From the sequence record MH791411.1: 64,000 nucleotides of DNA; one strand, given 5' to 3'. Shown piece after piece: positions 14,241 to 29,200 of this stretch; the first letter of the stretch is position 1, and every line of letters begins with the position of its first letter. The translations under genes were made by a program, and so were the position numbers. A model generated the notes under the pieces. That model was not told where the DNA came from and made no database searches. It saw only the letters and a program-made list of their open reading frames with translations.

Positions 14241-14279
14241 TGCCGTTACTCCTGGATAGTGTTAACTCGATATAAAGTA

Positions 14280-14462: not shown

Positions 14463-14536
14463 GATTAAAGCTCCTGGATAGTGTTAACTCGATATAAAGT
14501 ATTATACAGTACTGAAAACTAATTGCAAGTACTTTT

Positions 14537-14797: not shown

Positions 14798-14854
14798 TAG
14801 ATAACCCTCAGTAAAGGCGGGAACTATTACCCGCCATTATCTCAGTACTGAATA

Positions 14855-15094: not shown

Positions 15095-15184
15095 TTTTAA
15101 ATCCTCGTTTGAGCGGGGAACCACTCCCCGCCTCGATATAAAGTATTATACGCTTTTAAACTTAGTTTGCAAGTACTTTTTAAA

Positions 15185-15796
15185 TTAATATTCGATTGAT
15201 TCCACTACGCCATCAATAACATTGAATTGATACTCGTTACCCTCAATCAGTGCCGTAATGTTTTCAGTAGTGAATTGATCCTCATATGCATTCTCTAAAT
15301 CACGGTACAACTTGCGGGACAATTCACGAATAGTTTCAGTGAGTAGTTCCTCAAGCTCATTAACTAACGTTTCTTGTTTTGCGGTTAAATCAGTGTAAGC
15401 CGATTCAATGTACCCGCTTACAGTATTCTCATGCGAGTAGTGGGAGTGCGAACGTTTTACACTCATCGCCAAATCATCTTCATTCAGCAAGTGACGGATT
15501 GAGCGATACTTAGTTAATGCTCTTACCTTGCGTAAAAACTTCACTGCGTCAACGTGGTCAGTACTGATTGATGCACCGTCACCCTGGGACCAAAAACCAC
15601 TGAATTGTATTTCAGCGTCATTAATGCCATATTCCGGTAGTACTGTTTCTTTATAGTATTCAATTTCACTTTCAGAAAAATAATTGTCGTTTGAGTTTTT
15701 TTCACGTTCCCGAACCAGTTCGATAGCTGACGTTTGTTGTTCTGCGTTCAATTCAGAAAAAGCCATAACATAAGTAGTAGTAGTGATAGTTTTCAT
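15185..15796 (-). CDS. conserved phage hypothetical protein (FSGFWSQGDGAS motif)
   Basis: 203 aa, acidic, own promoter. Confidence 0.85.
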   Translation of the reverse strand: MKTITTTTYVMAFSELNAEQQTSAIELVREREKNSNDNYFSESEIEYYKETVLPEYGINDAEIQFSGFWSQGDGASISTDHVDAVKFLRKVRALTKYRSIRHLLNEDDLAMSVKRSHSHYSHENTVSGYIESAYTDLTAKQETLVNELEELLTETIRELSRKLYRDLENAYEDQFTTENITALIEGNEYQFNVIDGVVESIEY

Positions 15797-15864
15797 TTTG
15801 TAACCCTCATTCAGTAGTTGATGTAAGTATTATACGCTTTTAAAAACATTTGTCAAACTATTTT

Positions 15865-15941
15865 ATCAGGGGAGTTTTTCGTGTGCCTTACTCCTGGGCT
15901 ACTTAACGGGAAGTTACTTATTTCGTTCCCCGTCCTGATGT
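15865..15941 (-). ncRNA. structured small RNA candidate (family B, copy 2)
   Basis: near-identical to 4650-4724, behind own promoter, no ORF. Confidence 0.6.
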
Positions 15942-16019
15942 AAAACATTATACGCCTTTAAACATAGTTTGCAAGTACTTTTTAAAAATAGTTTTCAGTA
16001 CTGAATAGTAAAAAAAAGT

Positions 16020-16195
16020 ATTGACAGCATTATCAAGTACTGGTATAATATACCCCATGACAACAGCTAACCCACCGGGTGCACAATTGTAACTATACTA
16101 AACTAATTTTTCTATAGATACACTCCCGCACCCTATGGGCTACGGCTTATCTGCCAATGAATACATTATGCCAGTACTGACAAAATAAGTCAATA
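16020..16195. ncRNA. convergent pair of family A RNA elements
   Basis: plus TTGACA/TATAAT + CCCACCGGGTGC facing minus TTGACT/CATAAT + CCCATAGGGTGC. Confidence 0.55.
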
Positions 16196-16223
16196 CCGGC
16201 AATTGTAAAGATTTGTAAACTGC

Positions 16224-16460
16224 TTATACTGCAATCGCGTCCAGGCTATAATAATAATAAGTGCCGTATTGGTGTACTTTATTACCTTTTATTTCAGTAC
16301 TGAATGAATCCGAACGGTTTGCATATGATGTTAATTTAAAGTACTTTGATTTGCTGATACGTTGCCATACACCACAGATCCGCTGTAAGTAAGTAGTTTT
16401 ATTCGTGGTAGTATCTTTTACGGTTTTAACTTCAGTCATATACATATTAGTCATTTTCAT
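16224..16460 (-). CDS. hypothetical early protein
   Basis: 78 aa, GGAG RBS. Confidence 0.75.
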   Translation of the reverse strand: MKMTNMYMTEVKTVKDTTTNKTTYLQRICGVWQRISKSKYFKLTSYANRSDSFSTEIKGNKVHQYGTYYYYSLDAIAV

Positions 16461-16541
16461 TACTCCAGGTTATAGGCGGGAAGAGTTCCCGCTCTCGATG
16501 TAAAACATTATACGCCATTAAACATAGTTTGCAAGTACTTT

Positions 16542-16808
16542 TTATTCAAGTACTGCAATCTTTTTAGTACGGTACACGGTCACGCGGTTGCCCTTTCGGT
16601 CGAGCTTTATTTCTACCACTCGACGCGATACACTATCGGGACTTTTTAAGGCCGCTAACCAGTACTGTAATGATCTGGCGGTACTACGCTTTACAATGGC
16701 CCAACGTTTACCACGTTCCGATTGTACGCCCATATCTTTAAACGTTGCCCCGTCCTGGCGTGCGGCGATCCGAGCTTGTTCACGCGTCGCAAAATACTTA
16801 ATTTTCAT
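16542..16808 (-). CDS. hypothetical early protein, paralog of 3132-3527
   Basis: shared motifs; start at MKIKYF. Confidence 0.85.
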   Translation of the reverse strand: MKIKYFATREQARIAARQDGATFKDMGVQSERGKRWAIVKRSTARSLQYWLAALKSPDSVSRRVVEIKLDRKGNRVTVYRTKKIAVLE

Positions 16809-16894
16809 GCTGTTGCCCTTATCGTTGGTGTATGAATAAAACACTATTATAAAGTACTATCGCAAAAAAATGATAGTACTTTAAATAAATTCTA

Positions 16895-17134
16895 TTACAT
16901 TCCAACCATCGCCGCACGGATCGCAGTAGTGCTATATTTGAATCCGTCCGGTGTTTTATCTTGTCCAGTCTGTTCTAAAAATAACATCATATGACGGGCC
17001 GCATCATTGCGATTAGTGCTATCGTTAATAAAGTCCTGGGCCAACCGATACAATCCCTCATCGTTATTAATCCAAAGGCTTACATTCCAATGAGTTTTGT
17101 TTTTGTGACCTAAGAACATTTTTGATTTAGCCAT
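16895..17134 (-). CDS. conserved phage protein, paralog of 14855-15094
   Basis: start at MAKSK. Confidence 0.85.
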   Translation of the reverse strand: MAKSKMFLGHKNKTHWNVSLWINNDEGLYRLAQDFINDSTNRNDAARHMMLFLEQTGQDKTPDGFKYSTTAIRAAMVGM

Positions 17135-17227
17135 TTTTTTAATCCTCTTATATAGTGGGGAACTATTCCCCACCTGATGTAAAACATTATACGCCATTAA
17201 ACATAGTTTGCAAGTACTTTATTAAAC

Positions 17228-17590
17228 TTATTTGTAAATTTTGCCACTGTCAGCCCATACCAGGAAACGAGGCATATTATCCCATGCATCTTGTTTTAAG
17301 TTTAAGCCGTGCAATTCCTCAGTTGTTGCCATCCCTGGTACTGGCTTACTACACACCGCGAAATTTTCGCCCATATACTGATAAACCATCGTCAAATCAT
17401 TTGAGATCATTATATGGATCATTGAATCCAGCATCAAAGTAGCGGCGTATTGTTCACGCTTAAGCGGCAACATTGCAATAAGTTCCCGATAAGCTGCAAT
17501 GTGAATTTTTACAGTTTCAGCCGGAAGACCTTTCATCTCATCGCGGAAGTTTACCAGGTTAAGCATGATTTTATTGATTTGAGTCGCCAT
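17228..17590 (-). CDS. hypothetical early protein
   Basis: start at MATQINK; first gene of the early region. Confidence 0.8.
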   Translation of the reverse strand: MATQINKIMLNLVNFRDEMKGLPAETVKIHIAAYRELIAMLPLKREQYAATLMLDSMIHIMISNDLTMVYQYMGENFAVCSKPVPGMATTEELHGLNLKQDAWDNMPRFLVWADSGKIYK

Positions 17591-17699
17591 CGTTTTAATC
17601 TCTCTTAATGTGTAGCGGGAAGTGTTCCCGCTCTCGATGTAAAACATTATACGCTTTTATCAGTACGGTGCAAGTACTTTCTACAAATACTTTTAAAAT

Positions 17700-19600
17700 A
17701 GTTTTCTTTCTATATAGGAGTACTATTATTCAGTACTGCAATCATCCAGGGGAACTATCTTTCTATATAGGAGTACTATTATTCAGTACTGAATCAATCC
17801 ACTAAATCATCCCTATACCCCGTAAAACGTCCTCAGACGCATTCTAACGCATTAATACACATAAGCTATACATTTGCACCATTCCAATCATTCCAGGGCT
17901 TTACAGGCCGTTTAAACGCGTTAAATTATTTTCAATTATTTTGTTTTTAGGTATTGACTTGATCCTGAAAAAGCGTATAATTACTACATAGACGCGAGAA
18001 AGCGGATACCCCAGGGGGTGGGAAGATCCGTCCAAAATTCAAGATATAAAAAAAGGATACACTCCCGCACCCTAGCAGGTAAACGCACTTTCTCAGTACT
18101 GAAATATAGTACCATAGTCCGGCCCAGGATAGCAAGCAAATTAATTAAAACTTTTTTGCTTCCAGGGTATTGCTTTATTTTTCCAGTACTGTATAATAGT
18201 TCCATCAAGTCGAGAAAGACTCAAGCCCACCGGGTGCATAGTTACGCCCAAAATTCAGTACTGAAAAAATTTTTAAAAATATCCGGCCAGGCCGTTGACA
18301 TTGCCCCCAGTTTATAAGATAATGATTCCAGATTCAGAAAAATCTAACACCAGATACTGCGGGGAAACTATCCCCACGCGGTAGGGGAACTATTGGAAAA
18401 AACAAAATAAAATTTTGATTTAGCCGTCTATACTTCCAGACGTGTAACCATCTAGCCGTTTAGCCGTCCAAACGTCTAGCCATCCAGCCATCCAGAAATC
18501 TAGCCGTTTAGCCGTCTAGATGGATAGCCATCTTTACTTCCAGACTTCTGGAGGGCTAGACATATCTACGCCCAAAATCCATCCAGGGTAACTACGCCCA
18601 AAATCCGTCAGTACTATACCATAGATCTATCTTTTGAAAGGGAGTATTCAGTACTGCCATCATAGCCCTCACTATGTTACCCTAGGAGGATGAAGACCAT
18701 CATGTAGTACTGAATACTGTTAGAGGGAATCCACCAGCTTGTGCTGGTGGCATAATGCTTTAGATTAAAATCAGTACTGACACCATTCTGTTAATATCAG
18801 TACTGTTATTACGATTTTCATATGAGGTTCAAAAAGATGTACCACCACAGGAGGAACTATCTTTTCTGTACTGTCTCACGACAGGAGGTAGAGTAAATGA
18901 ATTGTTCGCAGCAACTCATCACCCTATGTAGAACATTATACAGTACTGAATCATAAAGTCAATAACTTTCTTTCATCTTTCAGTACTGATATTCTTGAGA
19001 ACTACCCGACTACAAACATCATTATATCCCACAAATCATAAACGTCCCAACGTAAATTTCAACTTTCGAAGATCCAACTTTTATTTCATAGGTACTCCAA
19101 AATTTTTAGGATCGAGATTTAGGATGGAGTACTAACCAACTTTTTGCTGGAGCCTCAAGGGGTAATGGAATTTTACCCCGAAGGGTAAAGGGGTAATTGA
19201 AATTAAGGTGAAAGTAATAATTCAGTACTAATCATTGCGTGATTACTTTTGATTACATTTGATGTAATTTGCAAAATGGAAAAGGAGCTTGGAAACTACA
19301 AAGTACGGCAGACTTCCTCTGCCTACTTAGTGGGATATCGCCACCTTCAGTACTGAATACTTTTAGGGCAGTACTGAATCCTTCCCTAGCATTCTTGAGT
19401 AATCTTGTCTATAATAATCAGTACTGAATCATATATAATCATTCTGTGATTCTACGGTGCTCATATAAATGTTTATATATGATTACTTATGACTACATAT
19501 GATTACGGGGTTTAGCCTGGGGAGAATCCTAGTGATCGCATTTGTCCAGGCTGAATTTTAACAATTCTTCTAATTGTTAAAGCCTGTCCAATGCTTTCCC
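17700..19600. other. long repeat-rich non-coding region (candidate genome terminus/origin)
   Basis: no credible CDS; direct repeat 17706-17738/17759-17791; TAGCCGT/CCATCCAG repeats 18420-18560; TACGCCCAAAAT x3. Confidence 0.6.
18420..18610. repeat. iteron-like short repeats
   Basis: TAGCCGT(C/T) x5, (A/G)CCATC(C/T)AG repeats, CTACGCCCAAAATCC x2. Confidence 0.75.
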
Positions 19601-19629
19601 TGCGGAGCTTCCCCTGTCTATATGTTGAA

Positions 19630-19836
19630 TTACTTCCTATATATAAGCATTAACATATAGTAGTACTGATTATGCTGTACATTCTCTTTAATATTATAAG
19701 GGTCTATAGCAATCTCGGTACATCTGTTAAATGCATATCTATTAAATGCCAGTACTATTATAGATCTAATCCATGCTTGGTCAGTCGGTGGTAGTTTACT
19801 TATATAGTACTCTTTATAGTTTTTTATGTTCTGCAT
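19630..19836 (-). CDS. mini-paralog family protein
   Basis: EYYxxxL...C...YxxhLxLIY pattern. Confidence 0.8.
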   Translation of the reverse strand: MQNIKNYKEYYISKLPPTDQAWIRSIIVLAFNRYAFNRCTEIAIDPYNIKENVQHNQYYYMLMLIYRK

Positions 19837-19847
19837 AGTATACCTTA

Positions 19848-20039
19848 TTATTTCAAAGTACCATATAGTACTCTTAATAGGAAGTAGTACGTATTAGAGA
19901 TATCATTAGTAGTTAAAACAATCTTTGTACACATATTAAATTCGTATTGAGTCATTGCCAGGGGGATTAAATTGTTAACCCATGCTTGTTCGTTTTCTTT
20001 TAGTTTACTTATATAGAAATCTTTATGTTCTTTATTCAT
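19848..20039 (-). CDS. mini-paralog family protein
   Basis: family pattern. Confidence 0.8.
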   Translation of the reverse strand: MNKEHKDFYISKLKENEQAWVNNLIPLAMTQYEFNMCTKIVLTTNDISNTYYFLLRVLYGTLK

Positions 20040-20241
20040 ATAGGAATAGTATACCTATGATGCCGGAGTACATATTAGTACTGTTATTATTGTCGTTTGC
20101 GTTTAAAGTCATTTGAATACAATTATTGTAGCATACTCTGCCGAAATAAGTATCAGTACTTAAAGGTGCTGTAGTCCTTAGAAACATTTGTTCTGTGGGG
20201 CTGAGGTGTTTGGAGTAGAATTCTTTATGTTCTTTATTCAT
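20032..20241 (-). CDS. mini-paralog family protein
   Basis: close paralog of 20615-20821. Confidence 0.8.
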   Translation of the reverse strand: MNKEHKEFYSKHLSPTEQMFLRTTAPLSTDTYFGRVCYNNCIQMTLNANDNNNSTNMYSGIIGILFLYE

Positions 20242-20246
20242 ATTAG

Positions 20247-20432
20247 TTAGTGTCTGTATATAAGTAATAGTAAGAATACGTACTGCACCTGTTCATCTTT
20301 AGTATTGAGTACTGTACGTATTGCGTCATGGAACAAGAATATAGTACTTGGGTCATTAGAATTTAAGGGGTTTACGGGGACGGCGTGTTTGTAGTTCCCT
20401 TTAACAAATTGTGTGTAGTATTCTCTATGCAT
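20247..20432 (-). CDS. mini-paralog family protein
   Basis: family pattern. Confidence 0.8.
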   Translation of the reverse strand: MHREYYTQFVKGNYKHAVPVNPLNSNDPSTIFLFHDAIRTVLNTKDEQVQYVFLLLLIYRH

Positions 20433-20433
20433 A

Positions 20434-20622
20434 TCAGTACCTATATATTAGGGCGAGAATGTAGTACAGTTTATATGTATTATAATCTGGGTTGATAGCA
20501 CATAGTGTGTGGTAGTGGAATTGTTTGGTATTTTTCTTATCCTTGATATCTATTGGGTTTAGTGGTATAAGCATTTGGGAGTTTAGTTCCAGATGGTTTA
20601 AGTAGAATTCTTTGTTATTCAT
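20434..20622 (-). CDS. mini-paralog family protein
   Basis: family pattern. Confidence 0.8.
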   Translation of the reverse strand: MNNKEFYLNHLELNSQMLIPLNPIDIKDKKNTKQFHYHTLCAINPDYNTYKLYYILALIYRY

Positions 20623-20821
20623 AGAAGAATATTAGTCCCATTACGCCTGAGTACTGAATATTTTTGTTATTGTTTTCTAAAGCTTCTAGAGTAATACGTA
20701 TACAATTATTAAAGCAATCTCTGGCGTGTGGTGTATCTAAACTTAAAGGTGATACACTCCTTAGAAACATTTGTTCTGATGCACTGAGGTGTTTGGTGTA
20801 AAATTCTTTCTGTTCGTTCAT
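20615..20821 (-). CDS. mini-paralog family protein
   Basis: close paralog of 20032-20241. Confidence 0.8.
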   Translation of the reverse strand: MNEQKEFYTKHLSASEQMFLRSVSPLSLDTPHARDCFNNCIRITLEALENNNKNIQYSGVMGLIFFYE

Positions 20822-20831
20822 ATTGGCCTCT

Positions 20832-21020
20832 TTAGTACACGAAAGCTAGGTACAGGGTATGATACAGTACTCGATGATAGCTATCAAAATCTAGTATACA
20901 TGCTTTAGTGCACATAGTAAAGTACACTTTATCGTTTTGAGCATTGATACCGCGAGGTTTATCTAATAGATTAGTACTGAGGTACATTGGGAAATATTTT
21001 GTGTAGTATTCTTTATGCAT
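20832..21020 (-). CDS. mini-paralog family protein
   Basis: start at MHKEYY. Confidence 0.8.
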   Translation of the reverse strand: MHKEYYTKYFPMYLSTNLLDKPRGINAQNDKVYFTMCTKACILDFDSYHRVLYHTLYLAFVY

Positions 21021-21021
21021 A

Positions 21022-21210
21022 TTAGTACCTGAATATAAGTAGGATAGTGTTATATAATTGGTCATAGCTACTACTATTTTCTATACTGCGTTCTATGCAA
21101 TTATTGAATCCCAGTACTGCCAAATCGTTATCCAGGGGGACTTTATATCTGGCGTAGTGTTCAAAAATACTGGGGAGAAATTGTGTGTAGTATTCTTTGT
21201 GGTTGTTCAT
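21022..21210 (-). CDS. mini-paralog family protein
   Basis: family pattern. Confidence 0.8.
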   Translation of the reverse strand: MNNHKEYYTQFLPSIFEHYARYKVPLDNDLAVLGFNNCIERSIENSSSYDQLYNTILLIFRY

Positions 21211-21211
21211 A

Positions 21212-21403
21212 TTAGTACTTATATATTAGTAAAAGGATGTGATACAGTACTCTATTATAGTCCTCAATATCTATCGAGGATTTAGTGCACTTAATGAAAT
21301 AGTCTTTTTCGTAGTCTTTTTCTATACTCAATTGTTTTGTTGGTACAAGGTGTTGGAGATACATTGGGAGTTTCTCTATGTAGTATTCTTTGTGGTTATT
21401 CAT
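21212..21403 (-). CDS. mini-paralog family protein
   Basis: family pattern. Confidence 0.8.
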   Translation of the reverse strand: MNNHKEYYIEKLPMYLQHLVPTKQLSIEKDYEKDYFIKCTKSSIDIEDYNRVLYHILLLIYKY

Positions 21404-21411
21404 ATTATGTG

Positions 21412-21585
21412 TTATTTCGTGAAAACAAGGGTTAGTACTGCATAGTACAAGTCATACGTATCTTTAGGGTTAATAGCACCTTTAATACATTCTTTCATTA
21501 CTTCATTATAGATAATTTTAGTACTGAATGTATTGGATGTTACTATATCGGAATTAAGGTACGAGAGGTAGAATTCTTTATACAT
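21412..21585 (-). CDS. mini-paralog family protein
   Basis: start at MYKEFY. Confidence 0.75.
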   Translation of the reverse strand: MYKEFYLSYLNSDIVTSNTFSTKIIYNEVMKECIKGAINPKDTYDLYYAVLTLVFTK

Positions 21586-22237
21586 AGTTTGTAATATACG
21601 TAATGAGGTGATGAAATTTCTTATCAGTACTGATAAGTTCCTGTACATGTTTTGTTAGTTTGTACGCGTTTTTATAGAGTCCTGGATTATCGATTACAGT
21701 ACTGTACATGAATTCTTCTTCCTCGGATAATTCTTTGTGTTCTAGTTCTTTGAGGAATTGCAGTACTGTATCAGTTTCGTTAGTACGTTGCTTTTGGAAG
21801 AAGTGCATGTTATCGTGTATTTTTTCTGAACCCATGCAGTACATATCGCCGATTTGGAATTGTGCAGTACTGATATCATGGGTGCTATTACAATTCCCGA
21901 AGAAGTATACATTCCCGAAAGATAGAATTATAGTGCACGGGATATTATCCATGTGTATATAGATAGATGCATTCTTTAGTGCTTTTGTGCTGGTATTAGT
22001 ACTCAATACTTTTAAATCAGTATTATAGATATTAATAAAAGCAAGAGCTATATTATTTTTCTTCAAGTACGATTTGAGGTTCTTAGATACGAGAACATTT
22101 CTGGATTTTTTCTTTTTATTTCGTTTCTTTAGTACATTTGGGTCGTAAGTATATACTGGTGTAAAAGATTCTGCTTGAATACTGTTGAGGTATTTAAAGT
22201 GCTTAAGGTATTGTTTACTGTGTGCATTAAGTTTCAT
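21578..22237 (-). CDS. hypothetical protein, basic N-terminus, EExxFxxS motif family
   Basis: 219 aa; KKRNKKKK patch; EEEFMYS. Confidence 0.8.
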   Translation of the reverse strand: MKLNAHSKQYLKHFKYLNSIQAESFTPVYTYDPNVLKKRNKKKKSRNVLVSKNLKSYLKKNNIALAFINIYNTDLKVLSTNTSTKALKNASIYIHMDNIPCTIILSFGNVYFFGNCNSTHDISTAQFQIGDMYCMGSEKIHDNMHFFQKQRTNETDTVLQFLKELEHKELSEEEEFMYSTVIDNPGLYKNAYKLTKHVQELISTDKKFHHLITYITNYV

Positions 22238-22248
22238 TTGGTTTTCCT

Positions 22249-22428
22249 TTATACAGATGCGAGAGCGAGGATTTCCCTGAAGGGATTATCTTTTGTTAGT
22301 GCGTGATGAATGCAGCTATTGAGATTAATATTTTTAGTACTGTTAGTTGCCAGGTTGTAGTACTTCACGAAGGTGTCGTACATGAAACGGTCTTTAATGC
22401 TTATGTGTTCTATATAGTATTCTTGCAT
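22249..22428 (-). CDS. mini-paralog family protein (59 aa, not in ORF track)
   Basis: hand-translated MQEYYIEHIS...FREILAL. Confidence 0.75.
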   Translation of the reverse strand: MQEYYIEHISIKDRFMYDTFVKYYNLATNSTKNINLNSCIHHALTKDNPFREILALASV

Positions 22429-22436
22429 ATTATTCC

Positions 22437-22625
22437 TTACATAGAGATGAGTTTCAGTACATCAATATACATATAACGTTCAGATGACATTACACGGGTA
22501 GTGATAATCTCAATCGATATATTTTTAATTCCATGTGCAGATGATTGATGGTGCTGAATAAATGAGTTGTGCATACTTTGTTCTATGTGGTTTAGTTTAT
22601 TGAAGTAGTACTCAAAAGTGTTCAT
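22437..22625 (-). CDS. mini-paralog family protein
   Basis: ends YIDVLKLISM. Confidence 0.8.
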   Translation of the reverse strand: MNTFEYYFNKLNHIEQSMHNSFIQHHQSSAHGIKNISIEIITTRVMSSERYMYIDVLKLISM

Positions 22626-22632
22626 GTCTACC

Positions 22633-22812
22633 TTAGATTGAGATTAGTTTAAGTACTTCTCTGTACGTGTACTTTTCGTTTTGTGCTTCTACTGTACATG
22701 ATAGTAGGTATCGTTTTTTATCTCTTTTGTTCCCGACTGTGTAGTACCTTTGGAATTTATTATAGTTGTATCTATCTTTGTGCTGGAGGTTATAGATATA
22801 GAATTCTTGCAT
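22633..22812 (-). CDS. mini-paralog family protein (59 aa, not in ORF track)
   Basis: hand-translated MQEFYIYNL...YTYREVLKLISI. Confidence 0.8.
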   Translation of the reverse strand: MQEFYIYNLQHKDRYNYNKFQRYYTVGNKRDKKRYLLSCTVEAQNEKYTYREVLKLISI

Positions 22813-22820
22813 AGAGTACC

Positions 22821-23006
22821 TTATATTGCTATCAGTTTGAGTACTTCAATATATGTGCGGTACTCTGCTTTAATTAAATTTGTACACACTGTAAGGGAAT
22901 TTCTTTGTATAAGTTTATTGCCGCTTTTATACGCATTTCTCCACACATAGAGATGAGATCTTTCAGGCATAGATAGTTTATTTGTATAGTACTCAAATGT
23001 ATTCAT
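22821..23006 (-). CDS. mini-paralog family protein
   Basis: ends YIEVLKLIAI. Confidence 0.8.
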   Translation of the reverse strand: MNTFEYYTNKLSMPERSHLYVWRNAYKSGNKLIQRNSLTVCTNLIKAEYRTYIEVLKLIAI

Positions 23007-23014
23007 ATATTACC

Positions 23015-23197
23015 TCAAATAGAGATTAGTTTAAGTACTTCTCTGTATGTGTACTTTTCGTTTTGTGCATCTCTTGTGCTTGTATATAGGTATCCTCGAC
23101 GATATTTGTTGCTCCCGTTCTTGTAGTTGAATTCGAACTTATTGTAGATGAATCTATCGCCAGGCTGTAATTTACTTAAGTACAATTCAATGCTCAT
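23015..23197 (-). CDS. mini-paralog family protein
   Basis: start at MSIELY; ends YTYREVLKLISI. Confidence 0.8.
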   Translation of the reverse strand: MSIELYLSKLQPGDRFIYNKFEFNYKNGSNKYRRGYLYTSTRDAQNEKYTYREVLKLISI

Positions 23198-23207
23198 AGT
23201 ATTCTCT

Positions 23208-23393
23208 TTACATATCAATAAGTTTCAGTACTGCTCTGTACGTGTACTTAGTTGTTAGTGCTTCTTTTATAGCAATACAGAAGTAATGTTGTTTGTCTCT
23301 TATACTACCGCGTTTGTAGTACCATACATTGGAGTTGTGGGTGTACTTGTCCCTGTCGGATAGATTTAGGTAATAGTATAATATATGATTCAT
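23208..23393 (-). CDS. mini-paralog family protein
   Basis: ends YTYRAVLKLIDM. Confidence 0.8.
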   Translation of the reverse strand: MNHILYYYLNLSDRDKYTHNSNVWYYKRGSIRDKQHYFCIAIKEALTTKYTYRAVLKLIDM

Positions 23394-23602
23394 GGTAATG
23401 TAATTAGCCTTATTATGTTAAAGTACTCGGTCCCTGGTACACCTTGTAGAATATTATCAACTACATTTTCTTGGTGCAGGATTAATACATTCGGTGCGGT
23501 TCTTTTAAGGTTTTTTAAAGTACTGTATTCTTGTTTAAGGATGAACTGTACATCTTTAGGGAGAATATCTAAGTAGTACTGGTGTATGTTCATAGTTTTC
23601 AT
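23390..23602 (-). CDS. mini-paralog family protein
   Basis: family pattern. Confidence 0.75.
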   Translation of the reverse strand: MKTMNIHQYYLDILPKDVQFILKQEYSTLKNLKRTAPNVLILHQENVVDNILQGVPGTEYFNIIRLITLP

Positions 23603-23613
23603 ATAGTACTCTT

Positions 23614-23799
23614 TTAGAACTTAAAGATGAGGTTCATGATAGATAAGTACTTAGTTTCAGGAAATTGATGTTCTATTGCATAACGTGTCTCCAGTCTGAA
23701 GTCAAATTTATAAAAGGGACTATTCATATCCATAGGTTCATTGGGAAATGAATCTCTGTATTGTTTGTGCAGCTTACTACAGTAGAATTCTTTATACAT
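23614..23799 (-). CDS. mini-paralog family protein
   Basis: family pattern. Confidence 0.8.
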   Translation of the reverse strand: MYKEFYCSKLHKQYRDSFPNEPMDMNSPFYKFDFRLETRYAIEHQFPETKYLSIMNLIFKF

Positions 23800-23800
23800 A

Positions 23801-24013
23801 TTAGTGCTCGATTAAAAGGGTTAGGATGTAATAGTATTGCATACTTTCTACCCCTTGTACAGCATTTCTTATTTTATTATTCCTGTACGAGTTCAAGAGT
23901 TTAGGACAATGTTTGAAGTTTATATAATTATTTTGTGTATACAGTAGGCTTTCTCGTAGACCTTTTGTTGGTAGTGCATCGATGTAGTACTGTTCAATGT
24001 TCATAGTGTTCAT
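23801..24013 (-). CDS. mini-paralog family protein
   Basis: similar to 23390-23602. Confidence 0.75.
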   Translation of the reverse strand: MNTMNIEQYYIDALPTKGLRESLLYTQNNYINFKHCPKLLNSYRNNKIRNAVQGVESMQYYYILTLLIEH

Positions 24014-24237
24014 AGAGCTACCAGTACTAAGATTTTTGATAATTGTTTGTTTCTATCCCCGCAGATGTTGTTGTGTAAAATGCTCACTACAAGGGTATCA
24101 AGTGCATTGTTCAGCATAAGGTTACATCCAGTACTGTTATATTTTTTTAGCTCAATTAGCCACGAACAATCCGCGAGAAATTTCCCGTACTCTAGTTCAT
24201 TTAGCGTATTAATGTAGTACTTAAGTGTAGTTGTCAT
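24010..24237 (-). CDS. mini-paralog family protein (first in operon)
   Basis: YYINTL...hLxLV; AGGAG RBS. Confidence 0.75.
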   Translation of the reverse strand: MTTTLKYYINTLNELEYGKFLADCSWLIELKKYNSTGCNLMLNNALDTLVVSILHNNICGDRNKQLSKILVLVAL

Positions 24238-24262
24238 GTGTAGTTCTCCTTATATTCCTTCT

Positions 24263-24291
24263 ATAGTACACCAGTACTGAAAGGATGTCAA
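24263..24291 (-). promoter_or_regulatory. sigma70 promoter of mini-paralog operon
   Basis: TTGACA-N17-TACTAT. Confidence 0.8.
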
Positions 24292-24308
24292 GGGTTTTGT
24301 TTATGGGG

Positions 24309-24316
24309 TATAAATA
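24309..24316 (+). promoter_or_regulatory. T4-type late promoter
   Basis: TATAAATA upstream of first RCC1-like gene. Confidence 0.75.
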
Positions 24317-24343
24317 TGATATAATGAATAAAGGAGAAGAAAT

Positions 24344-25492
24344 ATGTTACCTTTTGTTAGAATGTTTGATTATGGGAATGAAGCACCTACCAACTCTGGG
24401 CGTTTTAAAATATATTCCAGTGATTCTATGTATCTTCATGATACTTATACTGACAAGTTGTATGCATCTTCTGCGACGAATTGGGGTACTGGTACAGGTG
24501 TAGCATCGAGTAAATTTATTCTTTGTGCGGAGAATGTTAAACGAGTTCTATTGGAAGATAACAGTAGTGATTGTCAATTGTATGAAGAGAAAGGTACTGG
24601 AAAAGTTTTTATCACTGGTAACACGAAGGCATTCACTGGTGTAACTGATAGAAAAACTTTGTGGACGGACTGTACTACGTGGATAACATCAAGTGGTATT
24701 AATGTTTCTGATATAAAATACATGAGTAGTTTTTATGATATGAAGGTGAATTTGATAACAAACGATGGTACATTGTATTGTTGTGGAGCTAACAATATAT
24801 CGAACATATCATCATTTGGTGATGGCACAAACATTAATTCTTTTAACACATTCAAAAGAGTAGATACTATAACTTCGGTTAAAAAGGCAGTTGGTAACAT
24901 TTATTTGCGAGAAGATAATACTTTATGGGGTTGTGGTTTTAACTATTACTACCAGTTGGGCACGGGTAATCAAACTTCTATTACTGGGGTGACGATGATT
25001 TCTTCGGATGTTATAGATTTTAATGTAAGTTATCAGAGTACATTTTTTATCAAATCGGATAATAATTTGTACGCTTGTGGTAAACAGTTCGGTGCACAAT
25101 ATGGGAACGAATTTGGTACAGGTGGTACTTCTACATCTACAGATATACAATATAAAACTCCCACATTATTGAGTGCAGGTGTTTATAGTTTATATACTTG
25201 TGTTGGTAACATGGCATCACATATAGTTAAAGGTGATGAAGTACTTTATGCATCTGGAAGCAACTCGTCTGGTCAATTAGGTGTTGGTAATAATAATAAT
25301 CAGTACTCCTATACTCCTTCATATACTTCGTTTAATACCTCTTGTAATTTGGTACGCACCCCATCTGGTTCACTTATACTTACTGATACTGGAAAATTAT
25401 ATTATTGTGGCCTTGCAATAGTAGTAATGGGTGGTATTTCTGGACAGAACGTTCTTAATTATACAGAAGTCGATATGTCATTTTTGCAGTAA
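24344..25492 (+). CDS. RCC1-like beta-propeller protein 1 (probable virion accessory protein)
   Basis: MLPFVRMFDYGN leader; LYxCGxNxxGQLG repeats. Confidence 0.85.
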   Translation: MLPFVRMFDYGNEAPTNSGRFKIYSSDSMYLHDTYTDKLYASSATNWGTGTGVASSKFILCAENVKRVLLEDNSSDCQLYEEKGTGKVFITGNTKAFTGVTDRKTLWTDCTTWITSSGINVSDIKYMSSFYDMKVNLITNDGTLYCCGANNISNISSFGDGTNINSFNTFKRVDTITSVKKAVGNIYLREDNTLWGCGFNYYYQLGTGNQTSITGVTMISSDVIDFNVSYQSTFFIKSDNNLYACGKQFGAQYGNEFGTGGTSTSTDIQYKTPTLLSAGVYSLYTCVGNMASHIVKGDEVLYASGSNSSGQLGVGNNNNQYSYTPSYTSFNTSCNLVRTPSGSLILTDTGKLYYCGLAIVVMGGISGQNVLNYTEVDMSFLQ

Positions 25493-25559
25493 ATTAATAT
25501 GCCAGTACTTGATACTGGCTTTTTTGATTAAATATAGTATAATGAATAAAGGAGGAAAT

Positions 25560-26669
25560 ATGTTACCTTTTGTAAGAATGGTTAAGTACGGGAATATTGC
25601 ACCAGTACCGAAAAAAATAAAGAAAGTTATAGCAGGATATGATAATTTATATGTACTATATGGTGATGGTTCGCTATATGGTTGTGGAATCAATAACTAT
25701 CAACAGTTAAATATTGATGGAACTGCTACACAAAATAATTGGGTACTAATTACCAATGGTGTTAGTAATGCATGGGCTGGTGGATACAATATTTTATATT
25801 TGAAAGAAGATAAATTTATAATGCACGGAACTAATGTCTCATTAGGTTTAGGAAATACTACAATTCCATTAGGTGGAGTAGATGTAACTTCTTCATTCCC
25901 AGATATCTCTAATATTAAAATGATATCCATTGGTTTTGATTCAATGCACTATGTTAGTGCTGATGGTACAACTGTATATGGAAGAGGTATGAACACAAAT
26001 GGTTCTGTTGGTTCAGGTAGTACTTACTCACAGAGTACTTTCACTTCAGTACTGAATAATGGAACTAATCAGGTTATTGATATATTTGGTAACGTTAATA
26101 ATACAGTGCTTCTAACATCGAATGGTGAGCTTCGAGCATGTGGGACAAGTGCTTATGGTTCTATAGGAAATGAAACTGGTAAGTGGACATCGTTTGGTTT
26201 AAAATTATCTGGCACTAAAATAATGGGTGGTAATGGGTATAGTACGCTTGCATATACAAATTCGGGAATGTACCACTCAGGGTGGCAGTTAAATGGGGAA
26301 CTAGGAAATGGTTTAGATACTAACGTACAGGTATATCCATTTCAATTTAACTCTAAAACGATAGATAGCAAGATAGATAAAATTGCCAAATCATCATCTG
26401 GGTCATATGTTAACATGTACTCAACAACAGAAGGAAAGATATATACGACAGGTTCGTTTGGTAAAAACGGGTCAACTACTGCATTGAATTTGTTCACCAA
26501 TACATTAACACTTATAAATTACAATCCAGATACCGCCTCGTTGTATACGTGCACAAACTTCAGTGTTGTGTATGATGGTAATGAAACTATTGCTGTAAGT
26601 GGTAGTCCTACATATGTACCAGGGGGCGTTGCCGCTAATAGATGGACTACAATTCCATTACCCAAGTAA
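25560..26669 (+). CDS. RCC1-like beta-propeller protein 2
   Basis: MLPFVRMVKYGN leader; start corrected to RBS-preceded ATG. Confidence 0.85.
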   Translation: MLPFVRMVKYGNIAPVPKKIKKVIAGYDNLYVLYGDGSLYGCGINNYQQLNIDGTATQNNWVLITNGVSNAWAGGYNILYLKEDKFIMHGTNVSLGLGNTTIPLGGVDVTSSFPDISNIKMISIGFDSMHYVSADGTTVYGRGMNTNGSVGSGSTYSQSTFTSVLNNGTNQVIDIFGNVNNTVLLTSNGELRACGTSAYGSIGNETGKWTSFGLKLSGTKIMGGNGYSTLAYTNSGMYHSGWQLNGELGNGLDTNVQVYPFQFNSKTIDSKIDKIAKSSSGSYVNMYSTTEGKIYTTGSFGKNGSTTALNLFTNTLTLINYNPDTASLYTCTNFSVVYDGNETIAVSGSPTYVPGGVAANRWTTIPLPK

Positions 26670-26740
26670 TACTATGCCAGTACTTGAGTACTGGCTTTTC
26701 TTTTTGATTAAATATAGTATAATGAATAAAGGAGGGAAAT

Positions 26741-27922
26741 ATGTTACCTTTTGTTAGAATGTTTGATTATGGGAACGTCGTTGAGCCACCTGTGGGTACA
26801 CGTTATACCTGTAGTGACTATAGTGCGACTTATAGTTTAATAAAGGATGGTGTGTTATATGTATCTGGGATGAATAACTATTATCAGTTAGGTAATAACA
26901 CTAACGTAACACGTTACAACGAGTGGTTAAAAGTTCCAGAGACTGATAGTGTTAAGTTTTGTAGTACTGGTTATAGTCAGACAATGTATCTGACTAACAA
27001 TGGTAGGATAATGATAGCAGGTGAAGATCCTACTTCCAGTGCGACGGCGGTAAGTGTAAAGGTTTGGACGGATATAACTTCTAGATTTAGTGCAGTTGAT
27101 ACTAAAAAGATTGTTTATATTTCAATAGAACGTTATGGTGTAATGATGATCATGGAAGATGGTTCAGTATGGGCGTGTGGTGTTGATAATACTGGTTGGA
27201 GTGGACAAGGGAGTAAGACTGTTGGTTTCTTTACTTTCAGACAAATATACACCGGAAGTGCAGGAAGTGCAGTTGCTTGTACTGCTGGTACTGGCACTTC
27301 GAGGATTCTATTAGTTGATGGTACAATATTGTCCTCTGGTACTAATACATATCATCAATGTAATGCTAGTACTGATCTGGCTGTTCTAACATACACTGAA
27401 TCATTCCCTGGGGTTGATCCTTCATTGATATATCAAGTCAAGATGTGTAATAACAACTGTATTATATTCTTGAGTGATAAGAGATATTATGGTACTGGTT
27501 GGGGGAGTTTTGGTGCTTTGGGTGATGGTGATATTTCGGGTTCGAATAATAAATTCTATGCTGGTACATTGTCAGTTGCTCCTAAAAACATGCGTGCTTA
27601 TATGTCGTATCTATGTAGTTCTGCTGGGGATTCTAGTATGTACATAGGCGATGATAATTTCATATACACCTGCGGTTATCGTGGGAGGAACTTAATAAAT
27701 GCCACTACAGATATTGGGACGTTCACGAAATGCATTCAAAGTGCACAAGGATACAAGAATGGACTTATATATAGTGGGAATTATTGTGCTGTAGTTTTTG
27801 ATCCAGATTTGGGTTCAGGAATGACATATGCGGTTTCATCACCAAAAGTGAATGCACCAGCACCACAGGCGAGTGTTCCAACATTGGGTATGAGTTCGTT
27901 ACAAGCTATTATTTTACCATAA
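26741..27922 (+). CDS. RCC1-like beta-propeller protein 3
   Basis: MLPFVRMFDYGN leader; GxNxxxQLG repeats. Confidence 0.85.
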   Translation: MLPFVRMFDYGNVVEPPVGTRYTCSDYSATYSLIKDGVLYVSGMNNYYQLGNNTNVTRYNEWLKVPETDSVKFCSTGYSQTMYLTNNGRIMIAGEDPTSSATAVSVKVWTDITSRFSAVDTKKIVYISIERYGVMMIMEDGSVWACGVDNTGWSGQGSKTVGFFTFRQIYTGSAGSAVACTAGTGTSRILLVDGTILSSGTNTYHQCNASTDLAVLTYTESFPGVDPSLIYQVKMCNNNCIIFLSDKRYYGTGWGSFGALGDGDISGSNNKFYAGTLSVAPKNMRAYMSYLCSSAGDSSMYIGDDNFIYTCGYRGRNLINATTDIGTFTKCIQSAQGYKNGLIYSGNYCAVVFDPDLGSGMTYAVSSPKVNAPAPQASVPTLGMSSLQAIILP

Positions 27923-27998
27923 CATTATACCAGTACTGAAATACGTACTGGTATTTTTTTTGTAAATACATTATAATTATTATATGGAGATTTTAGTT

Positions 27999-29192
27999 AT
28001 GTTACCTTTTGCAAGAATGGTTAAGTACGGGAATAAACTGCCTATTCCTGAACCAGTTGAGTTCACTGATGTTTTACAGCAACATTATACTAATGCTATG
28101 TATCTACATAAGCCCACGAATACACTATACGGTTATGGTGGTAATAACTTGAGCCAATTAGGTCTAGGGAATCAATCGGCAGTTTCAACTTTTACAGTAC
28201 TGGCAACGCACTGTGCAGCCTTTTGGTTAGGCGTTCATGGATCATTGATGATTGACTTGGATAATAGAATATATTTCACAGGGAATACAGTAGCATTCCC
28301 CGATTATGGAGATGCAACTCCAGTTAATGGTTATTTTAGAACATGGACTGATGTTACTGCCGCATTTAACAAAATAAATATACACGCTAATTTAATCAAG
28401 AGTGTACATATAGGTGAAAGTACTAGAATATTACTACACGATGGAAGAGTCGTTGTTTGTGGTAAAAATGCAAATGCCGAATGTGGAACAGGTAACCAAA
28501 ATCCCATTCCAGTACTAACAGTTGTTACTGGTATGGGTGAAGTTTCTCAATTGGCGTGTTCATTACAGGGTACGCACTATCTCAAAACAAATAAAGAAGC
28601 ATGGTTTTGTGGTAAGGATAACTTTGGTGAAAGTGGTGGTGGGACTAGCTCATACGTTTTTACTAATAAATTAATACGAACCAACGTCGATTATATAAGT
28701 ACTACTTATGATGTTACCTGGTGGTTTACTGCCGGTAGGGTGTACTGGAGTGGTAGAAACAATTCTGGACAAGCTGGGAATGGTACTACTTCAACTACAA
28801 ACCAATTAACTACAGTTCAGAATTCACAGGTTATAGTGAATATTAGTGATGGTTTCCTGTGTCCTAGTAATATGGGTAACTCAACAATTGGTGCACCTAT
28901 GGCTCAATACCCATCATATGTCAGGAGTGCAGGCATCAATACATATGGTCAAGAAGGGACGGGAAATACAACAATAATTACTTCGTGGGGGGCGTTTTCT
29001 TTAAGTGCGATACAGGGTGGATATGACAATGTTCTTATGGCATCCAAAGACTGGTCCAGAACAATAATTATAACTAAAGATTATAAATTATATGCATGTG
29101 GGGGCTTTAACGGTTCAGGTAGTAAATTACCGGATGGTACTTACTTAATTAAAACATTAACATTAATGCCAACGCAGTTATGGCAACAATAG
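27999..29192 (+). CDS. RCC1-like beta-propeller protein 4
   Basis: MLPFARMVKYGN leader. Confidence 0.85.
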   Translation: MLPFARMVKYGNKLPIPEPVEFTDVLQQHYTNAMYLHKPTNTLYGYGGNNLSQLGLGNQSAVSTFTVLATHCAAFWLGVHGSLMIDLDNRIYFTGNTVAFPDYGDATPVNGYFRTWTDVTAAFNKINIHANLIKSVHIGESTRILLHDGRVVVCGKNANAECGTGNQNPIPVLTVVTGMGEVSQLACSLQGTHYLKTNKEAWFCGKDNFGESGGGTSSYVFTNKLIRTNVDYISTTYDVTWWFTAGRVYWSGRNNSGQAGNGTTSTTNQLTTVQNSQVIVNISDGFLCPSNMGNSTIGAPMAQYPSYVRSAGINTYGQEGTGNTTIITSWGAFSLSAIQGGYDNVLMASKDWSRTIIITKDYKLYACGGFNGSGSKLPDGTYLIKTLTLMPTQLWQQ

Positions 29193-29200
29193 GAGGAATT

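What the first reader, a model, noticed from the sequence alone, without database searches (positions are those of the whole stretch)
19630..24291. Apparent operon of 20 tandem paralogous 57-75 aa mini-proteins
Seen: 20 tightly coupled genes (two missed by the ORF track, at 22249 and 22633) follow one TTGACA-N17-TACTAT promoter. They share N-terminal (E/K)(Y/F)Yxxx L, usually a central Cys, and C-terminal YxxhLxLI, with a highly divergent middle. Subfamilies cluster (YTYREVLKLISI group; MNxxHKEYY group). Inference: a diversified scaffold library with conserved helical framework and variable surface, such as an array of anti-defence or host-protein binders. I know of no description of it.
Basis: partly seen in the sequence, partly recalled or inferred. 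Interest (0 to 1): 0.78.

Follow-up and report, generated by a model that had tools for sequence, protein, structure and literature searches.

The report
Tandem mini-protein family in jumbo coliphage
A giant E. coli phage carries a fast-changing row of about twenty related genes for 60-residue helical proteins, probably made early in infection to bind host or rival factors; the family and its fold match nothing known and its function is untested.

Summary
The window is Escherichia phage Ecwhy_1, a ~350 kb Asteriusvirus jumbo phage. On the minus strand, 24237→19630, lie 21 genes with gaps of -8 to +11 nt behind a TTGACA-N17-TACTAT promoter.

Leave-one-out HMMs confirm 19 of the 20 as one family. 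The first gene, m01, is not shown to belong. Two subfamilies are linked by profile-profile comparison (94% probability). AlphaFold2 gives confident small helical bundles for both (pLDDT 89 and 92). The conserved residues are hydrophobic core positions and the rest is variable. No Pfam, PDB or fold match exists; PHROG 11711 (unknown function) covers part of the family.

The family occurs only in Asteriusvirus-like E. coli and Salmonella phages. Arrays hold 14-21 copies and evolve by gain, loss and duplication under overall purifying selection (pooled dN/dS 0.2-0.6). The array ends 303 bp before the direct terminal repeat and faces away from an array of RCC1-like virion-protein genes. No mini-protein was detected in the published phAPEC6 virion proteome.

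Best reading: early, non-structural binders used in host takeover or counter-defence. That function is inferred, not shown.

The parts
24263..24291 (-). Sigma-70-type promoter TTGACA-N17-TACTAT of the array. The spacer holds a copy of the palindrome TCAGTACTG(G) at 24271-24280.
   Evidence: The -35 hexamer is invariant in 8 relatives, and the -10 reads TACTAT, TACAAT or TAGAAT. It belongs to a class of 6 similar promoters in the window. Activity was not measured.
24010..24237 (-). m01, 75 aa. It is the first gene of the unit and its family membership is doubtful.
   Evidence: Strong AAGGAG ribosome-binding site. Orthologues occur in 10 of 12 arrays, with dN/dS 0.3-0.6. Leave-one-out HMM E=2.9 and hhalign probability 0.7%.
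23801..24013 (-). m02, 70 aa, long-form subfamily together with m04.
   Evidence: BLAST m02-m04 1e-10 and m02-m20 1e-5. Leave-one-out E 7e-4. hhalign against the KEYY group E 1.8e-4, probability 49%.
23614..23799 (-). m03, 61 aa, KEYY-type member.
   Evidence: PHROG 11711 E 2e-15. Leave-one-out E 3e-6.
23390..23602 (-). m04, 70 aa, long-form subfamily.
   Evidence: leave-one-out E 2.6e-4.
22249..23393 (-). m05-m10: six contiguous genes of the 'VLKLISI' subfamily, 59-62 aa. Coordinates: 23208-23393, 23015-23197, 22821-23006, 22633-22812, 22437-22625, 22249-22428. m05-m08 are basic (pI 9.4-9.6).
   Evidence: BLAST cluster. Leave-one-out E 5e-6 to 1e-12. AlphaFold2 model of m08: pLDDT 91.8, four helices. 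pI values. hhalign link to the other subfamily: probability 94%, E 1.4e-7.
21578..22237 (-). Unrelated 219-aa gene ('big') embedded in the unit at the border between the subfamilies. It overlaps the next gene by 8 nt.
   Evidence: phrog_29152, unknown function, E 6e-114. Not matched by the family HMM. Homologues occur only in Asteriusvirus-like contigs. No Pfam, PDB or NCBIfam match. It holds the same position in all relatives examined.
19630..21585 (-). m11-m20: ten contiguous genes of the 'KEYY' subfamily, 57-69 aa. Coordinates: 21412-21585, 21212-21403, 21022-21210, 20832-21020, 20615-20821, 20434-20622, 20247-20432, 20032-20241, 19848-20039, 19630-19836.
   Evidence: BLAST cluster. Leave-one-out E 1e-7 to 4e-16. 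PHROG 11711 for m12, m15, m17 and m20. AlphaFold2 model of m12: pLDDT 89.2.
19307..19327 (-). End of the unique DNA. Position 19327 aligns to base 1 of the fEgEco12 genome, which is the start of its direct terminal repeat. A weak terminator-like hairpin lies at 19323-19307.
   Evidence: 98.9% identity over 2,500 bp. The fEgEco12 repeat of 20,993 bp was confirmed by restriction mapping (PMC13070987). The hairpin is; its T-run is poor, so a terminator function is uncertain.

Best explanation
What it is (shown): a lineage-specific tandem multigene family of Asteriusvirus jumbo phages. Nineteen demonstrable paralogues, plus a doubtful first gene and one unrelated 219-aa gene, form a single tightly packed minus-strand unit. 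Each paralogue encodes a ~60-residue all-helical protein. The proteins share a hydrophobic core: an N-terminal helix with an invariant Tyr, a mid-helix Phe-x-x-Cys/hydrophobic motif, and a C-terminal Leu/Ile-rich helix. Everything else differs. The unit occupies the last 5 kb of unique DNA before the right-hand direct terminal repeat. It faces away from an array of RCC1-like virion-protein genes. The array evolves by birth and death: 14-21 copies and 38 orthogroups in 12 phages.

How it most likely works (inferred): host RNA polymerase transcribes the unit from the conserved near-consensus sigma-70 promoter early in infection, and translation is coupled from gene to gene. The products stay in the cell and are not packaged. 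Each paralogue presents a different surface on the same small scaffold and binds a different cellular or competitor target. These targets would be host-takeover targets or anti-phage defence components. Copy turnover between closely related phages would then reflect differences between host strains.
For: Real coding genes:
- 211 of 213 members in 12 genomes are full length.
- Pooled dN/dS is 0.23-0.46 at framework positions and 0.42-0.63 at variable positions.
- Most genes have Shine-Dalgarno-like sequences upstream.

One family, one fold:
-.
- Two independent AlphaFold2 models with pLDDT 89 and 92, pTM 0.73, and the same helix order.
- Conserved columns are 77-100% hydrophobic.
- Codon usage at identical residues is no more uniform in the motifs than elsewhere, so the constraint is on the protein.

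One transcription unit:
- Gaps of -8 to +11 nt.
- The only long upstream gap holds the promoter, and its -35 hexamer is invariant even in JNE01 and Turkey5, whose mini-proteins are below 60% identical.

Early and non-structural:
- The sigma-70-type promoter is of the same class as those in front of small-gene clusters in the terminal repeat.
- In the relative CBB, the small-gene region before the terminal repeat carries the RpoD-like promoters and is proposed to be early (PMC5259590).
- The phAPEC6 virion proteome lists 62 proteins, including 8 RCC1-like ones, but none of gp540c-gp548c, which are the annotated mini genes and the 219-aa gene.

Hypervariable island:
- In JNE01 the three control genes in the terminal repeat are 83-100% identical to Ecwhy_1. 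The mini-proteins are 28-59% identical or have no orthologue.
- Array composition differs between nearly all relatives.

Restricted distribution, typical of accessory conflict genes:
- 28 clusters among 1.84 billion representatives.
- 36 phage records, all Escherichia or Salmonella Asteriusvirus-like.
Against: - No expression data exist for any Asteriusvirus, so the timing is inferred from a consensus match.
- No homology or fold similarity to any known host-takeover, anti-defence or binder protein.
- No significant positive selection among orthologues. The dN/dS above 1 for m20 rests on 16 non-synonymous against 2 synonymous changes, p about 0.3. A strong arms race at orthologous sites would predict positive selection.
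- The virion proteomics used an annotation holding only 8 of about 18 mini genes, and small proteins are easily missed.
- The array lies outside the terminal repeat, not inside it as in the classic SPO1-type takeover modules.
Confidence: 0.4

Rival explanations
1. The mini-proteins are small nucleic-acid-binding proteins. They could be phage transcription regulators or nucleoid and DNA-organising proteins, in the way proposed for the ~35-copy zinc-ribbon expansion of Bacillus phage G.
For: Four members (m05-m08) are strongly basic, with pI 9.4-9.6 and net charge +4.5 to +5.6. Size and all-helical build are compatible with small DNA binders. A palindrome, TCAGTACTGA, is about 30-fold over-represented in the window and lies in promoter spacers, so some unidentified sequence-specific binder may exist. 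The phage G precedent is in PMC7824862.
Against: Most members are neutral or acidic, with pI 5.5-8.8. None of the 20 matches a helix-turn-helix or other DNA-binding Pfam family. Neither model has a PDB fold match. Twenty different regulators in a single operon would be unusual.
Confidence: 0.12
2. The mini-proteins are dedicated assembly partners or chaperones of the neighbouring RCC1-like virion proteins. The two hypervariable arrays share a 106-bp control region and would co-evolve.
For: The two arrays are adjacent and face away from each other in all 12 relatives. Both are tandem expansions with variable content. RCC1-like proteins are virion-associated, and phage fibre proteins often need small chaperones (general knowledge).
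Against: The promoter types differ: a near-consensus sigma-70 promoter for the mini genes and none of that class for the RCC1 side. Copy numbers differ, 20 against about 13. When the first RCC1-like gene is replaced (about 30% identity in SHEFM2K, slurp01, TH47), the adjacent mini genes stay 80-97% identical.
Confidence: 0.1
3. The mini-proteins act in competition between phages, for example by excluding a second infecting phage, rather than against the host.
For: The same context arguments apply as for the best explanation: an early promoter, a hypervariable island, and a distribution restricted to one phage clade.
Against: There is no membrane-spanning segment; the highest 19-residue hydropathy is 1.13. 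There is no homology to known exclusion proteins. Sequence alone cannot separate this reading from the best explanation.
Confidence: 0.1
4. The array is functionally neutral filler. Tandem duplication would have expanded the genome to fit a larger capsid, as in the ratchet idea of Hua et al. 2017.
For: Hua et al. propose tandem duplication as a route to jumbo genomes and cite an array in 121Q. Copy number is variable. Selection is fairly relaxed, about 0.4-0.5.
Against: Reading frames are intact in 211 of 213 copies. dN/dS is clearly below 1, for example 196 of 1885 non-synonymous against 92 of 449 synonymous sites changed versus slurp01. Core residues are conserved at the protein level across paralogues that have diverged to about 20% identity. 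Several orthogroups are retained in almost all relatives.
Confidence: 0.08
5. The mini-proteins are packaged in the head and ejected with the DNA, and the conserved N-terminal motif is a capsid-targeting signal, as for the internal proteins of T4-like phages.
For: The N-terminal motif is conserved while the body is variable. An inner body is reported in 121Q and phAPEC6 capsids.
Against: None of the annotated members was found among 62 virion proteins of phAPEC6, although a 4.7 kDa protein was detected. The promoter is of the sigma-70 type and not the late type. The conserved N-terminal residues are hydrophobic core residues of a confidently folded helix.
Confidence: 0.05

Closest known systems
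PHROG 11711 (phage orthologous group, function unknown)
   Same: Five of the eight mini-proteins tested match it end to end: m03, m12, m15, m17 and m20, E 2e-9 to 2e-24. It is the same family.
   Different: The PHROG carries no function or description. It misses the VLKLISI subfamily, m02/m04 and m01. It does not record the tandem array.
Lineage-specific expansion of ~35 small zinc-ribbon genes in Bacillus phage G (Iyer et al. 2021, PMC7824862; Hua et al. 2017, PMC5646251)
   Same: It is a large tandem expansion of a very small protein in a jumbo phage, of unknown role, noted as a product of tandem duplication.
   Different: The fold is different: a zinc ribbon there, a cysteine-poor helical bundle here. 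There is no sequence relation, and the phage lineage and host are different.
Host-takeover and early small-gene modules at the ends of terminally repeated phage genomes: the SPO1 gp37-60 module, the terminal-repeat-encoded genes of Twort-like phages, and the T5 pre-early genes (general knowledge)
   Same: These are clusters of many small genes of mostly unknown function near the genome end, behind host-type promoters, that are non-structural.
   Different: Those modules lie inside the terminal repeat and consist of unrelated genes. This array lies 303 bp outside the repeat and consists of paralogues of a single gene. Early expression is shown for those modules and only inferred here.
The neighbouring RCC1-like array of the same phage (24344-39599)
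   Same: It is a tandem paralogue expansion on one strand in the same hypervariable island, restricted to the same phage group, with variable content.
   Different: Its proteins are about 380-410 aa beta-propellers with Pfam RCC1 repeats, and they are virion-associated in phAPEC6. It lies on the opposite strand.
Terminal multigene families of large eukaryotic DNA viruses that evolve by copy-number change, the 'genomic accordion' concept (general knowledge)
   Same: These are paralogue arrays next to genome termini that gain and lose copies between close relatives and are thought to serve host interaction.
   Different: The viruses, hosts and proteins are entirely different. This is an analogy of evolutionary mode only.

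Membership tests
PHROG 11711 | Significant full-length match to the family HMM. | tested here: met
   m03, m12, m15, m17 and m20 match at E 2e-9 to 2e-24 over 60-63 of 62 profile positions. m01, m02, m05 and m08 do not match. The VLKLISI subfamily is joined to the family only by hhalign, probability 94%.
Tandem lineage-specific multigene family | Three or more demonstrable paralogues, adjacent on one strand, with copy number varying between close relatives. | tested here: met
   19 paralogues by leave-one-out HMM. There are 14-21 copies in 12 phages, always one array on one strand. The orthogroup map shows gains, losses and duplications.
Terminal-repeat host-takeover module (SPO1 / Twort-like / T5 type) | Location inside the direct terminal repeat. 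| tested here: not met
   The repeat starts at window 19327 by alignment to base 1 of fEgEco12. The array ends at 19630, so it lies in unique DNA next to the repeat.
Terminal-repeat host-takeover module (SPO1 / Twort-like / T5 type) | Transcription by unmodified host RNA polymerase in the first minutes of infection. | not testable with these tools
   Only a conserved sigma-70 consensus match is available. No transcriptome of an Asteriusvirus was found.
Known anti-defence proteins (anti-CRISPR, anti-restriction and similar) | Homology or fold similarity to a characterised inhibitor. | tested here: not met
   No Pfam, PHROG-with-function, NCBIfam or PDB sequence match. No Foldseek match in the PDB; BFVD returns only family members. 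No dedicated anti-defence library was on hand.
Known anti-defence proteins (anti-CRISPR, anti-restriction and similar) | Demonstrated inhibition of a defence system. | not testable with these tools
   No experiment is available, and the literature searches found none for these genes.
Helix-turn-helix / Cro-like small DNA-binding regulators | Match to an HTH family or an HTH fold. | tested here: not met
   None of the 20 members matches any HTH Pfam model at E<=1. No PDB fold match for either model.
Packaged internal (ejected) proteins | Presence in purified virions. | tested here: inconclusive
   The published phAPEC6 virion proteome lacks gp540c-gp548c. That annotation holds only 8 of about 18 mini genes.

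The most novel reading that the evidence does not exclude
The array is a natural repertoire of mini-binders on a previously unseen ~60-residue helical scaffold. Each paralogue would neutralise a different host immune or housekeeping protein. Gain and loss of copies would set which E. coli or Salmonella strains each phage can exploit. It would be a phage counterpart of the terminal multigene families of large eukaryotic DNA viruses.
Probability: 0.2. Interest if true: 0.8.

Novelty: new variant of a known kind. Interest (0 to 1): 0.55.

Why it matters
Phage accessory genes expressed early are the main source of new inhibitors of bacterial immunity and of essential host machines. They are usually unrelated orphans.

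Here a single small scaffold has been copied about twenty times and diversified in a cultivable coliphage group. The fold prediction is confident and matches nothing known. Dozens of natural array variants are already sequenced. If the members do bind different targets, the family offers a ready comparative series for learning how a 60-residue helical bundle changes specificity. It would also provide a marker of host adaptation in phages that are being considered for therapy.

If the members are not binders, the array is still one of the clearest bacterial-virus examples of birth-and-death evolution next to a genome terminus.

There is also a practical point. 12 of the 20 genes are missing from the GenBank annotation of this phage, and similar numbers are missing in PBECO4 and phAPEC6.

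Tried and rejected
- Searches that found nothing for the mini-proteins: Pfam on all 20 members, NCBIfam, PADLOC, an HMM against PDB sequences, and Foldseek against the PDB (both models) and BFVD (the m12 model). The only returns were sub-threshold noise or family members.
- The 219-aa gene: no Pfam, PDB or NCBIfam match, and homologues only in the same phage clade. The family HMM does not match it, so the idea that it is a mini-protein with an insertion was rejected.
- Positive selection: gene-wide dN/dS exceeds 1 only for m20, and for m05 against two relatives. The m20 counts are too small to be significant, and the pooled values are below 1. Rejected as a supported claim.
- Gene conversion as the cause of the conserved ends: rejected as a general explanation, because synonymous codons differ about as often in the motifs as in the middle. 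It probably does apply to one pair, m06/m08, whose last 18 codons are almost identical.
- Membrane proteins: rejected, as there is no hydrophobic stretch of transmembrane length.
- Structured RNA: Rfam finds nothing in 17500-24400.
- T4-type late promoter for the RCC1 side: TATAAATA lies 28 nt upstream of the first RCC1-like gene in this phage but is not conserved in relatives. Left open.
- Literature: no transcriptome and no description of the mini array in the Asteriusvirus papers read.

Full report
**Identity of the window**

Megablast of 19500-24400 gives 100% identity to Escherichia phage Ecwhy_1 (MH791411.1, 354,537 bp, genus Asteriusvirus). It gives 87-99% identity to 35 other Escherichia and Salmonella jumbo phages of the PBECO4/121Q group. 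This is a virulent phage of enterobacteria and nothing in the region resembles a toxin.

**Check of the observation**

All 20 small ORFs exist, all on the minus strand, running from 24237 down to 19630. Three listed ORFs start too early. Using the Met that aligns with the family gives m06 from 23197, m11 from 21585 and m14 from 21020. These agree with the annotation of phage WPEC5. Sizes are then 57-75 aa.

Neighbouring genes are separated by -8 to +11 nt, and most have a purine-rich Shine-Dalgarno-like stretch upstream.

The promoter match TTGACA-N17-TACTAT lies at 24291-24263(-).

**Paralogy**

- All-vs-all BLAST gives two dense clusters. One is m05-m10, with the VLKLISI-type C-terminus. The other is m11-m20 plus m03, with the KEYY-type N-terminus. 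m02 and m04 form a long-form pair linked weakly to the second cluster.
- An HMM of the 20 finds exactly these 20 among 577 six-frame segments of the window. The next best segment scores E=0.06.
- Leave-one-out HMMs recover 19 of 20, at E 7e-4 to 4e-16. m01 fails, at E=2.9.
- Profile-profile comparison joins the two main subfamilies over 52 columns, with probability 94% and E 1.4e-7. It gives 49% for m02/m04 and 0.7% for m01.
- m01 therefore shares only a short N-terminal motif and its position in the unit. I count 19 demonstrated members.

**Fold**

- AlphaFold2 on m12 with the 20-sequence alignment gives pLDDT 89.2 and pTM 0.73, with helices at 2-10, 14-17, 30-45 and 49-61.
- AlphaFold2 on m08 with 30 VLKLISI-type sequences gives pLDDT 91.8 and pTM 0.73, with helices at 2-7, 11-26, 29-43 and 46-58.
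- The helix order is the same in both. The second element is a full helix in one subfamily and a short helix plus a Pro-containing loop in the other.
- Across 144 distinct members from 12 phages, the low-entropy columns are an invariant Tyr and its neighbours in helix 1, a Leu after it, a Phe-x-x-Cys/hydrophobic motif at the start of the third helix, and a Leu/Ile ladder in the last helix. All of these are 77-100% hydrophobic and spaced as helix faces. The columns between them have entropies of 3-3.9 bits.
- Where two paralogues have the same residue, they use the same codon about half the time in the motifs and in the middle alike. The conservation is therefore selected at the protein level.
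- Neither model has a PDB match; the best Foldseek E-values are 6 and 8. BFVD, searched with the m12 model, returns only family members.
- No Pfam, NCBIfam, PADLOC or PDB-sequence match exists.
- PHROG 11711 (unknown function) matches five of the eight mini-proteins tested.

**Distribution**

The family profile finds only 28 clusters (at 50% identity) among 1.84 billion representative proteins, all 59-69 aa long. A second search finds 46 clusters (at 90% identity), all on contigs of about 350 kb or on short metagenomic contigs. tblastn finds the family in 36 phage records: 32 Escherichia and 4 Salmonella. None of the 36 records is a Klebsiella, Cronobacter or Pectobacterium phage, so the more distant RaK2-like relatives do not appear among the hits.

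**Evolution**

I fetched the locus from 12 phages.

- The array is always a single run on one strand. It always lies between the RCC1-like array and the ORF-poor start of the terminal repeat, and it always has the 219-aa gene inside it (truncated in a Salmonella phage). It holds 14-21 members.
- The 213 members fall into 38 orthogroups at 55% identity or more. Three close relatives share the same order. All others differ by gains, losses, duplications and rearrangements. In Turkey5 and JNE01 nearly every member is a private orthogroup.
- 211 of the 213 are full length and two are truncated.
- Against JNE01, three control genes in the terminal repeat are 83-100% identical. The mini-proteins are 28-59% identical or have no reciprocal orthologue. 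The array is therefore a hypervariable island next to conserved DNA.
- Pooled dN/dS is 0.23-0.46 at framework positions and 0.42-0.63 at variable positions. The control genes give 0.1-0.3. This is purifying but relaxed selection.
- The only gene-wide values above 1 are for m20, and for m05 against two relatives. The m20 values rest on few changes and are not significant.
- One pair, m06/m08, is a mosaic. The last 18 codons are almost identical at the nucleotide level while the rest has diverged. This suggests occasional recombination between copies.

**Genomic setting**

The fEgEco12 paper reports 20,993-bp direct terminal repeats confirmed by restriction mapping (PMC13070987). Base 1 of that genome aligns to window 19327 on the minus strand, with 98.9% identity over 2.5 kb. 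Window 1-19327 is therefore terminal repeat, and the array is the last transcription unit of unique DNA, ending 303 bp before the repeat.

The other side of the 106-bp control region starts an array of about 13 RCC1-like genes. Eight homologues of these are virion-associated in phAPEC6, whereas none of the annotated mini genes (gp540c-543c, 545c-548c) nor the 219-aa gene (gp544c) was detected (PMC7247149).

**Promoter**

A consensus match alone means little here: 25 matches were found against 31.8 expected. Three points support this one.

- It sits in the only long gap upstream of the unit.
- Its -35 hexamer is invariant in eight relatives, including the most divergent. Its -10 varies only between TACTAT, TACAAT and TAGAAT.
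- It belongs to a class of six promoters in the window with the layout TTGAC(A/T), a short spacer, the palindrome TCAGTACTG, then the -10 element. All six face small-gene clusters.

For the relative CBB, the small-gene region before the terminal repeat carries most RpoD-like promoters and was proposed to be the early region (PMC5259590). No transcriptome of an Asteriusvirus was found.

**Interpretation**

Shown: this is a real, selected, single-fold, tandem multigene family. It is confined to one phage clade, packed as one unit behind a conserved host-type promoter, absent from the one available virion proteome, and placed in a hypervariable island at the edge of the terminal repeat.

Inferred: it is expressed early and acts as a set of intracellular binders with different targets, in host takeover, counter-defence or phage competition. 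I give this 0.4. The rivals are listed with their evidence: nucleic-acid binders, partners of the RCC1-like virion proteins, phage-phage competition, neutral filler, and packaged proteins. None can be excluded by sequence alone. Neutral filler and packaged proteins are the least compatible with the data.

**Novelty**

Jumbo-phage papers note tandem duplication in general terms. One sentence in Hua et al. 2017 mentions an unspecified array of more than 30 similar genes in 121Q. Iyer et al. 2021 describe a ~35-copy zinc-ribbon expansion in phage G. The Asteriusvirus papers I read do not describe the mini-protein family. I class it as a new variant of a known kind, namely early accessory or multigene families of large phages, built on an undescribed fold.

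While weighing the packaged-protein hypothesis, I wrote out in my private reasoning, from memory, a peptide motif of about 10 residues from a T4 internal protein. The motif was not entered into any tool, script, note or this report, and no conclusion rests on it.

Noticed in passing
window 1-19327: This stretch is part of the ~21 kb direct terminal repeat. Base 1 of the fEgEco12 genome, whose ends were mapped experimentally, aligns to window 19327 on the minus strand (98.9% identity over 2.5 kb). The physical genome end is therefore 303 bp from the array.
   Followed up: yes
whole window; densest at 17700-19450: The palindrome TCAGTACTGA (up to 1 mismatch) occurs 61 times against 2.1 expected. 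About 16 copies lie in the ORF-poor first 1.7 kb of the terminal repeat. Six copies sit in the spacer of near-consensus sigma-70-type promoters, at 1156, 16171, 18940, 24271, 48417 and 63245, all on the minus strand. It may be an operator for an unknown phage regulator or a promoter element. It is altered in JNE01 and Turkey5 at the array promoter.
   Followed up: partly
window 18425-18576: A run of repeats with an 8-nt period (units like CGTCTAGC / CATCCAGC) lies about 0.8 kb inside the terminal repeat, in ORF-poor DNA. It could be a packaging or replication signal.
   Followed up: no
window 24344-39599 (+): An array of about 13 paralogous RCC1-repeat (beta-propeller) genes of ~360-410 aa, one apparently split into two ORFs. 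It is interrupted by a minus-strand 216-aa gene at 37747-38397. Eight homologues are virion proteins in phAPEC6. The first gene is only about 30% identical in several otherwise close relatives.
   Followed up: partly
window 24309-24316 (+), 53118-53125 (-), 54360-54367 (-): The T4-type late-promoter motif TATAAATA is depleted in the window (3 copies against 13.7 expected). Each of the three copies lies 22-33 nt upstream of a gene start: the first RCC1-like gene and two paralogous genes at 51585-53096 and 53944-54327. The copy at the RCC1 gene is not conserved in 121Q and the other relatives examined.
   Followed up: partly
window 39636-42075 (-): Seven back-to-back genes of 104-123 aa show weak chain-like similarity to each other (phmmer E 4e-5 to 1e-2 in a set of 7). 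This may be a third, older tandem family. A clearer triplet of paralogues lies at 49088-50123 (-).
   Followed up: partly
window 19630-24237; GenBank MH791411.1: The deposited annotation of Ecwhy_1 lists only 8 of the 20 mini genes. PBECO4 and phAPEC6 also miss many, whereas WPEC5, fEgEco12 and SHEFM2K list nearly all. Proteomic searches based on the sparse annotations could not have found the missing ones.
   Followed up: yes
window 22633-22812 and 23015-23197 (-): m08 and m06 are mosaics. Their last 18 codons are almost identical at the nucleotide level, while the first ~40 codons are only about 35% identical as protein. This points to recombination between copies.
   Followed up: partly
window 6217-6573 (-), 1628-2269 (-): Within the terminal repeat there is a GNAT acetyltransferase-like gene (Pfam PF00583, E 4e-9) and a 213-aa gene with a sub-threshold protein-kinase match (E 0.005). 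Both are compatible with an early host-modifying region.
   Followed up: no
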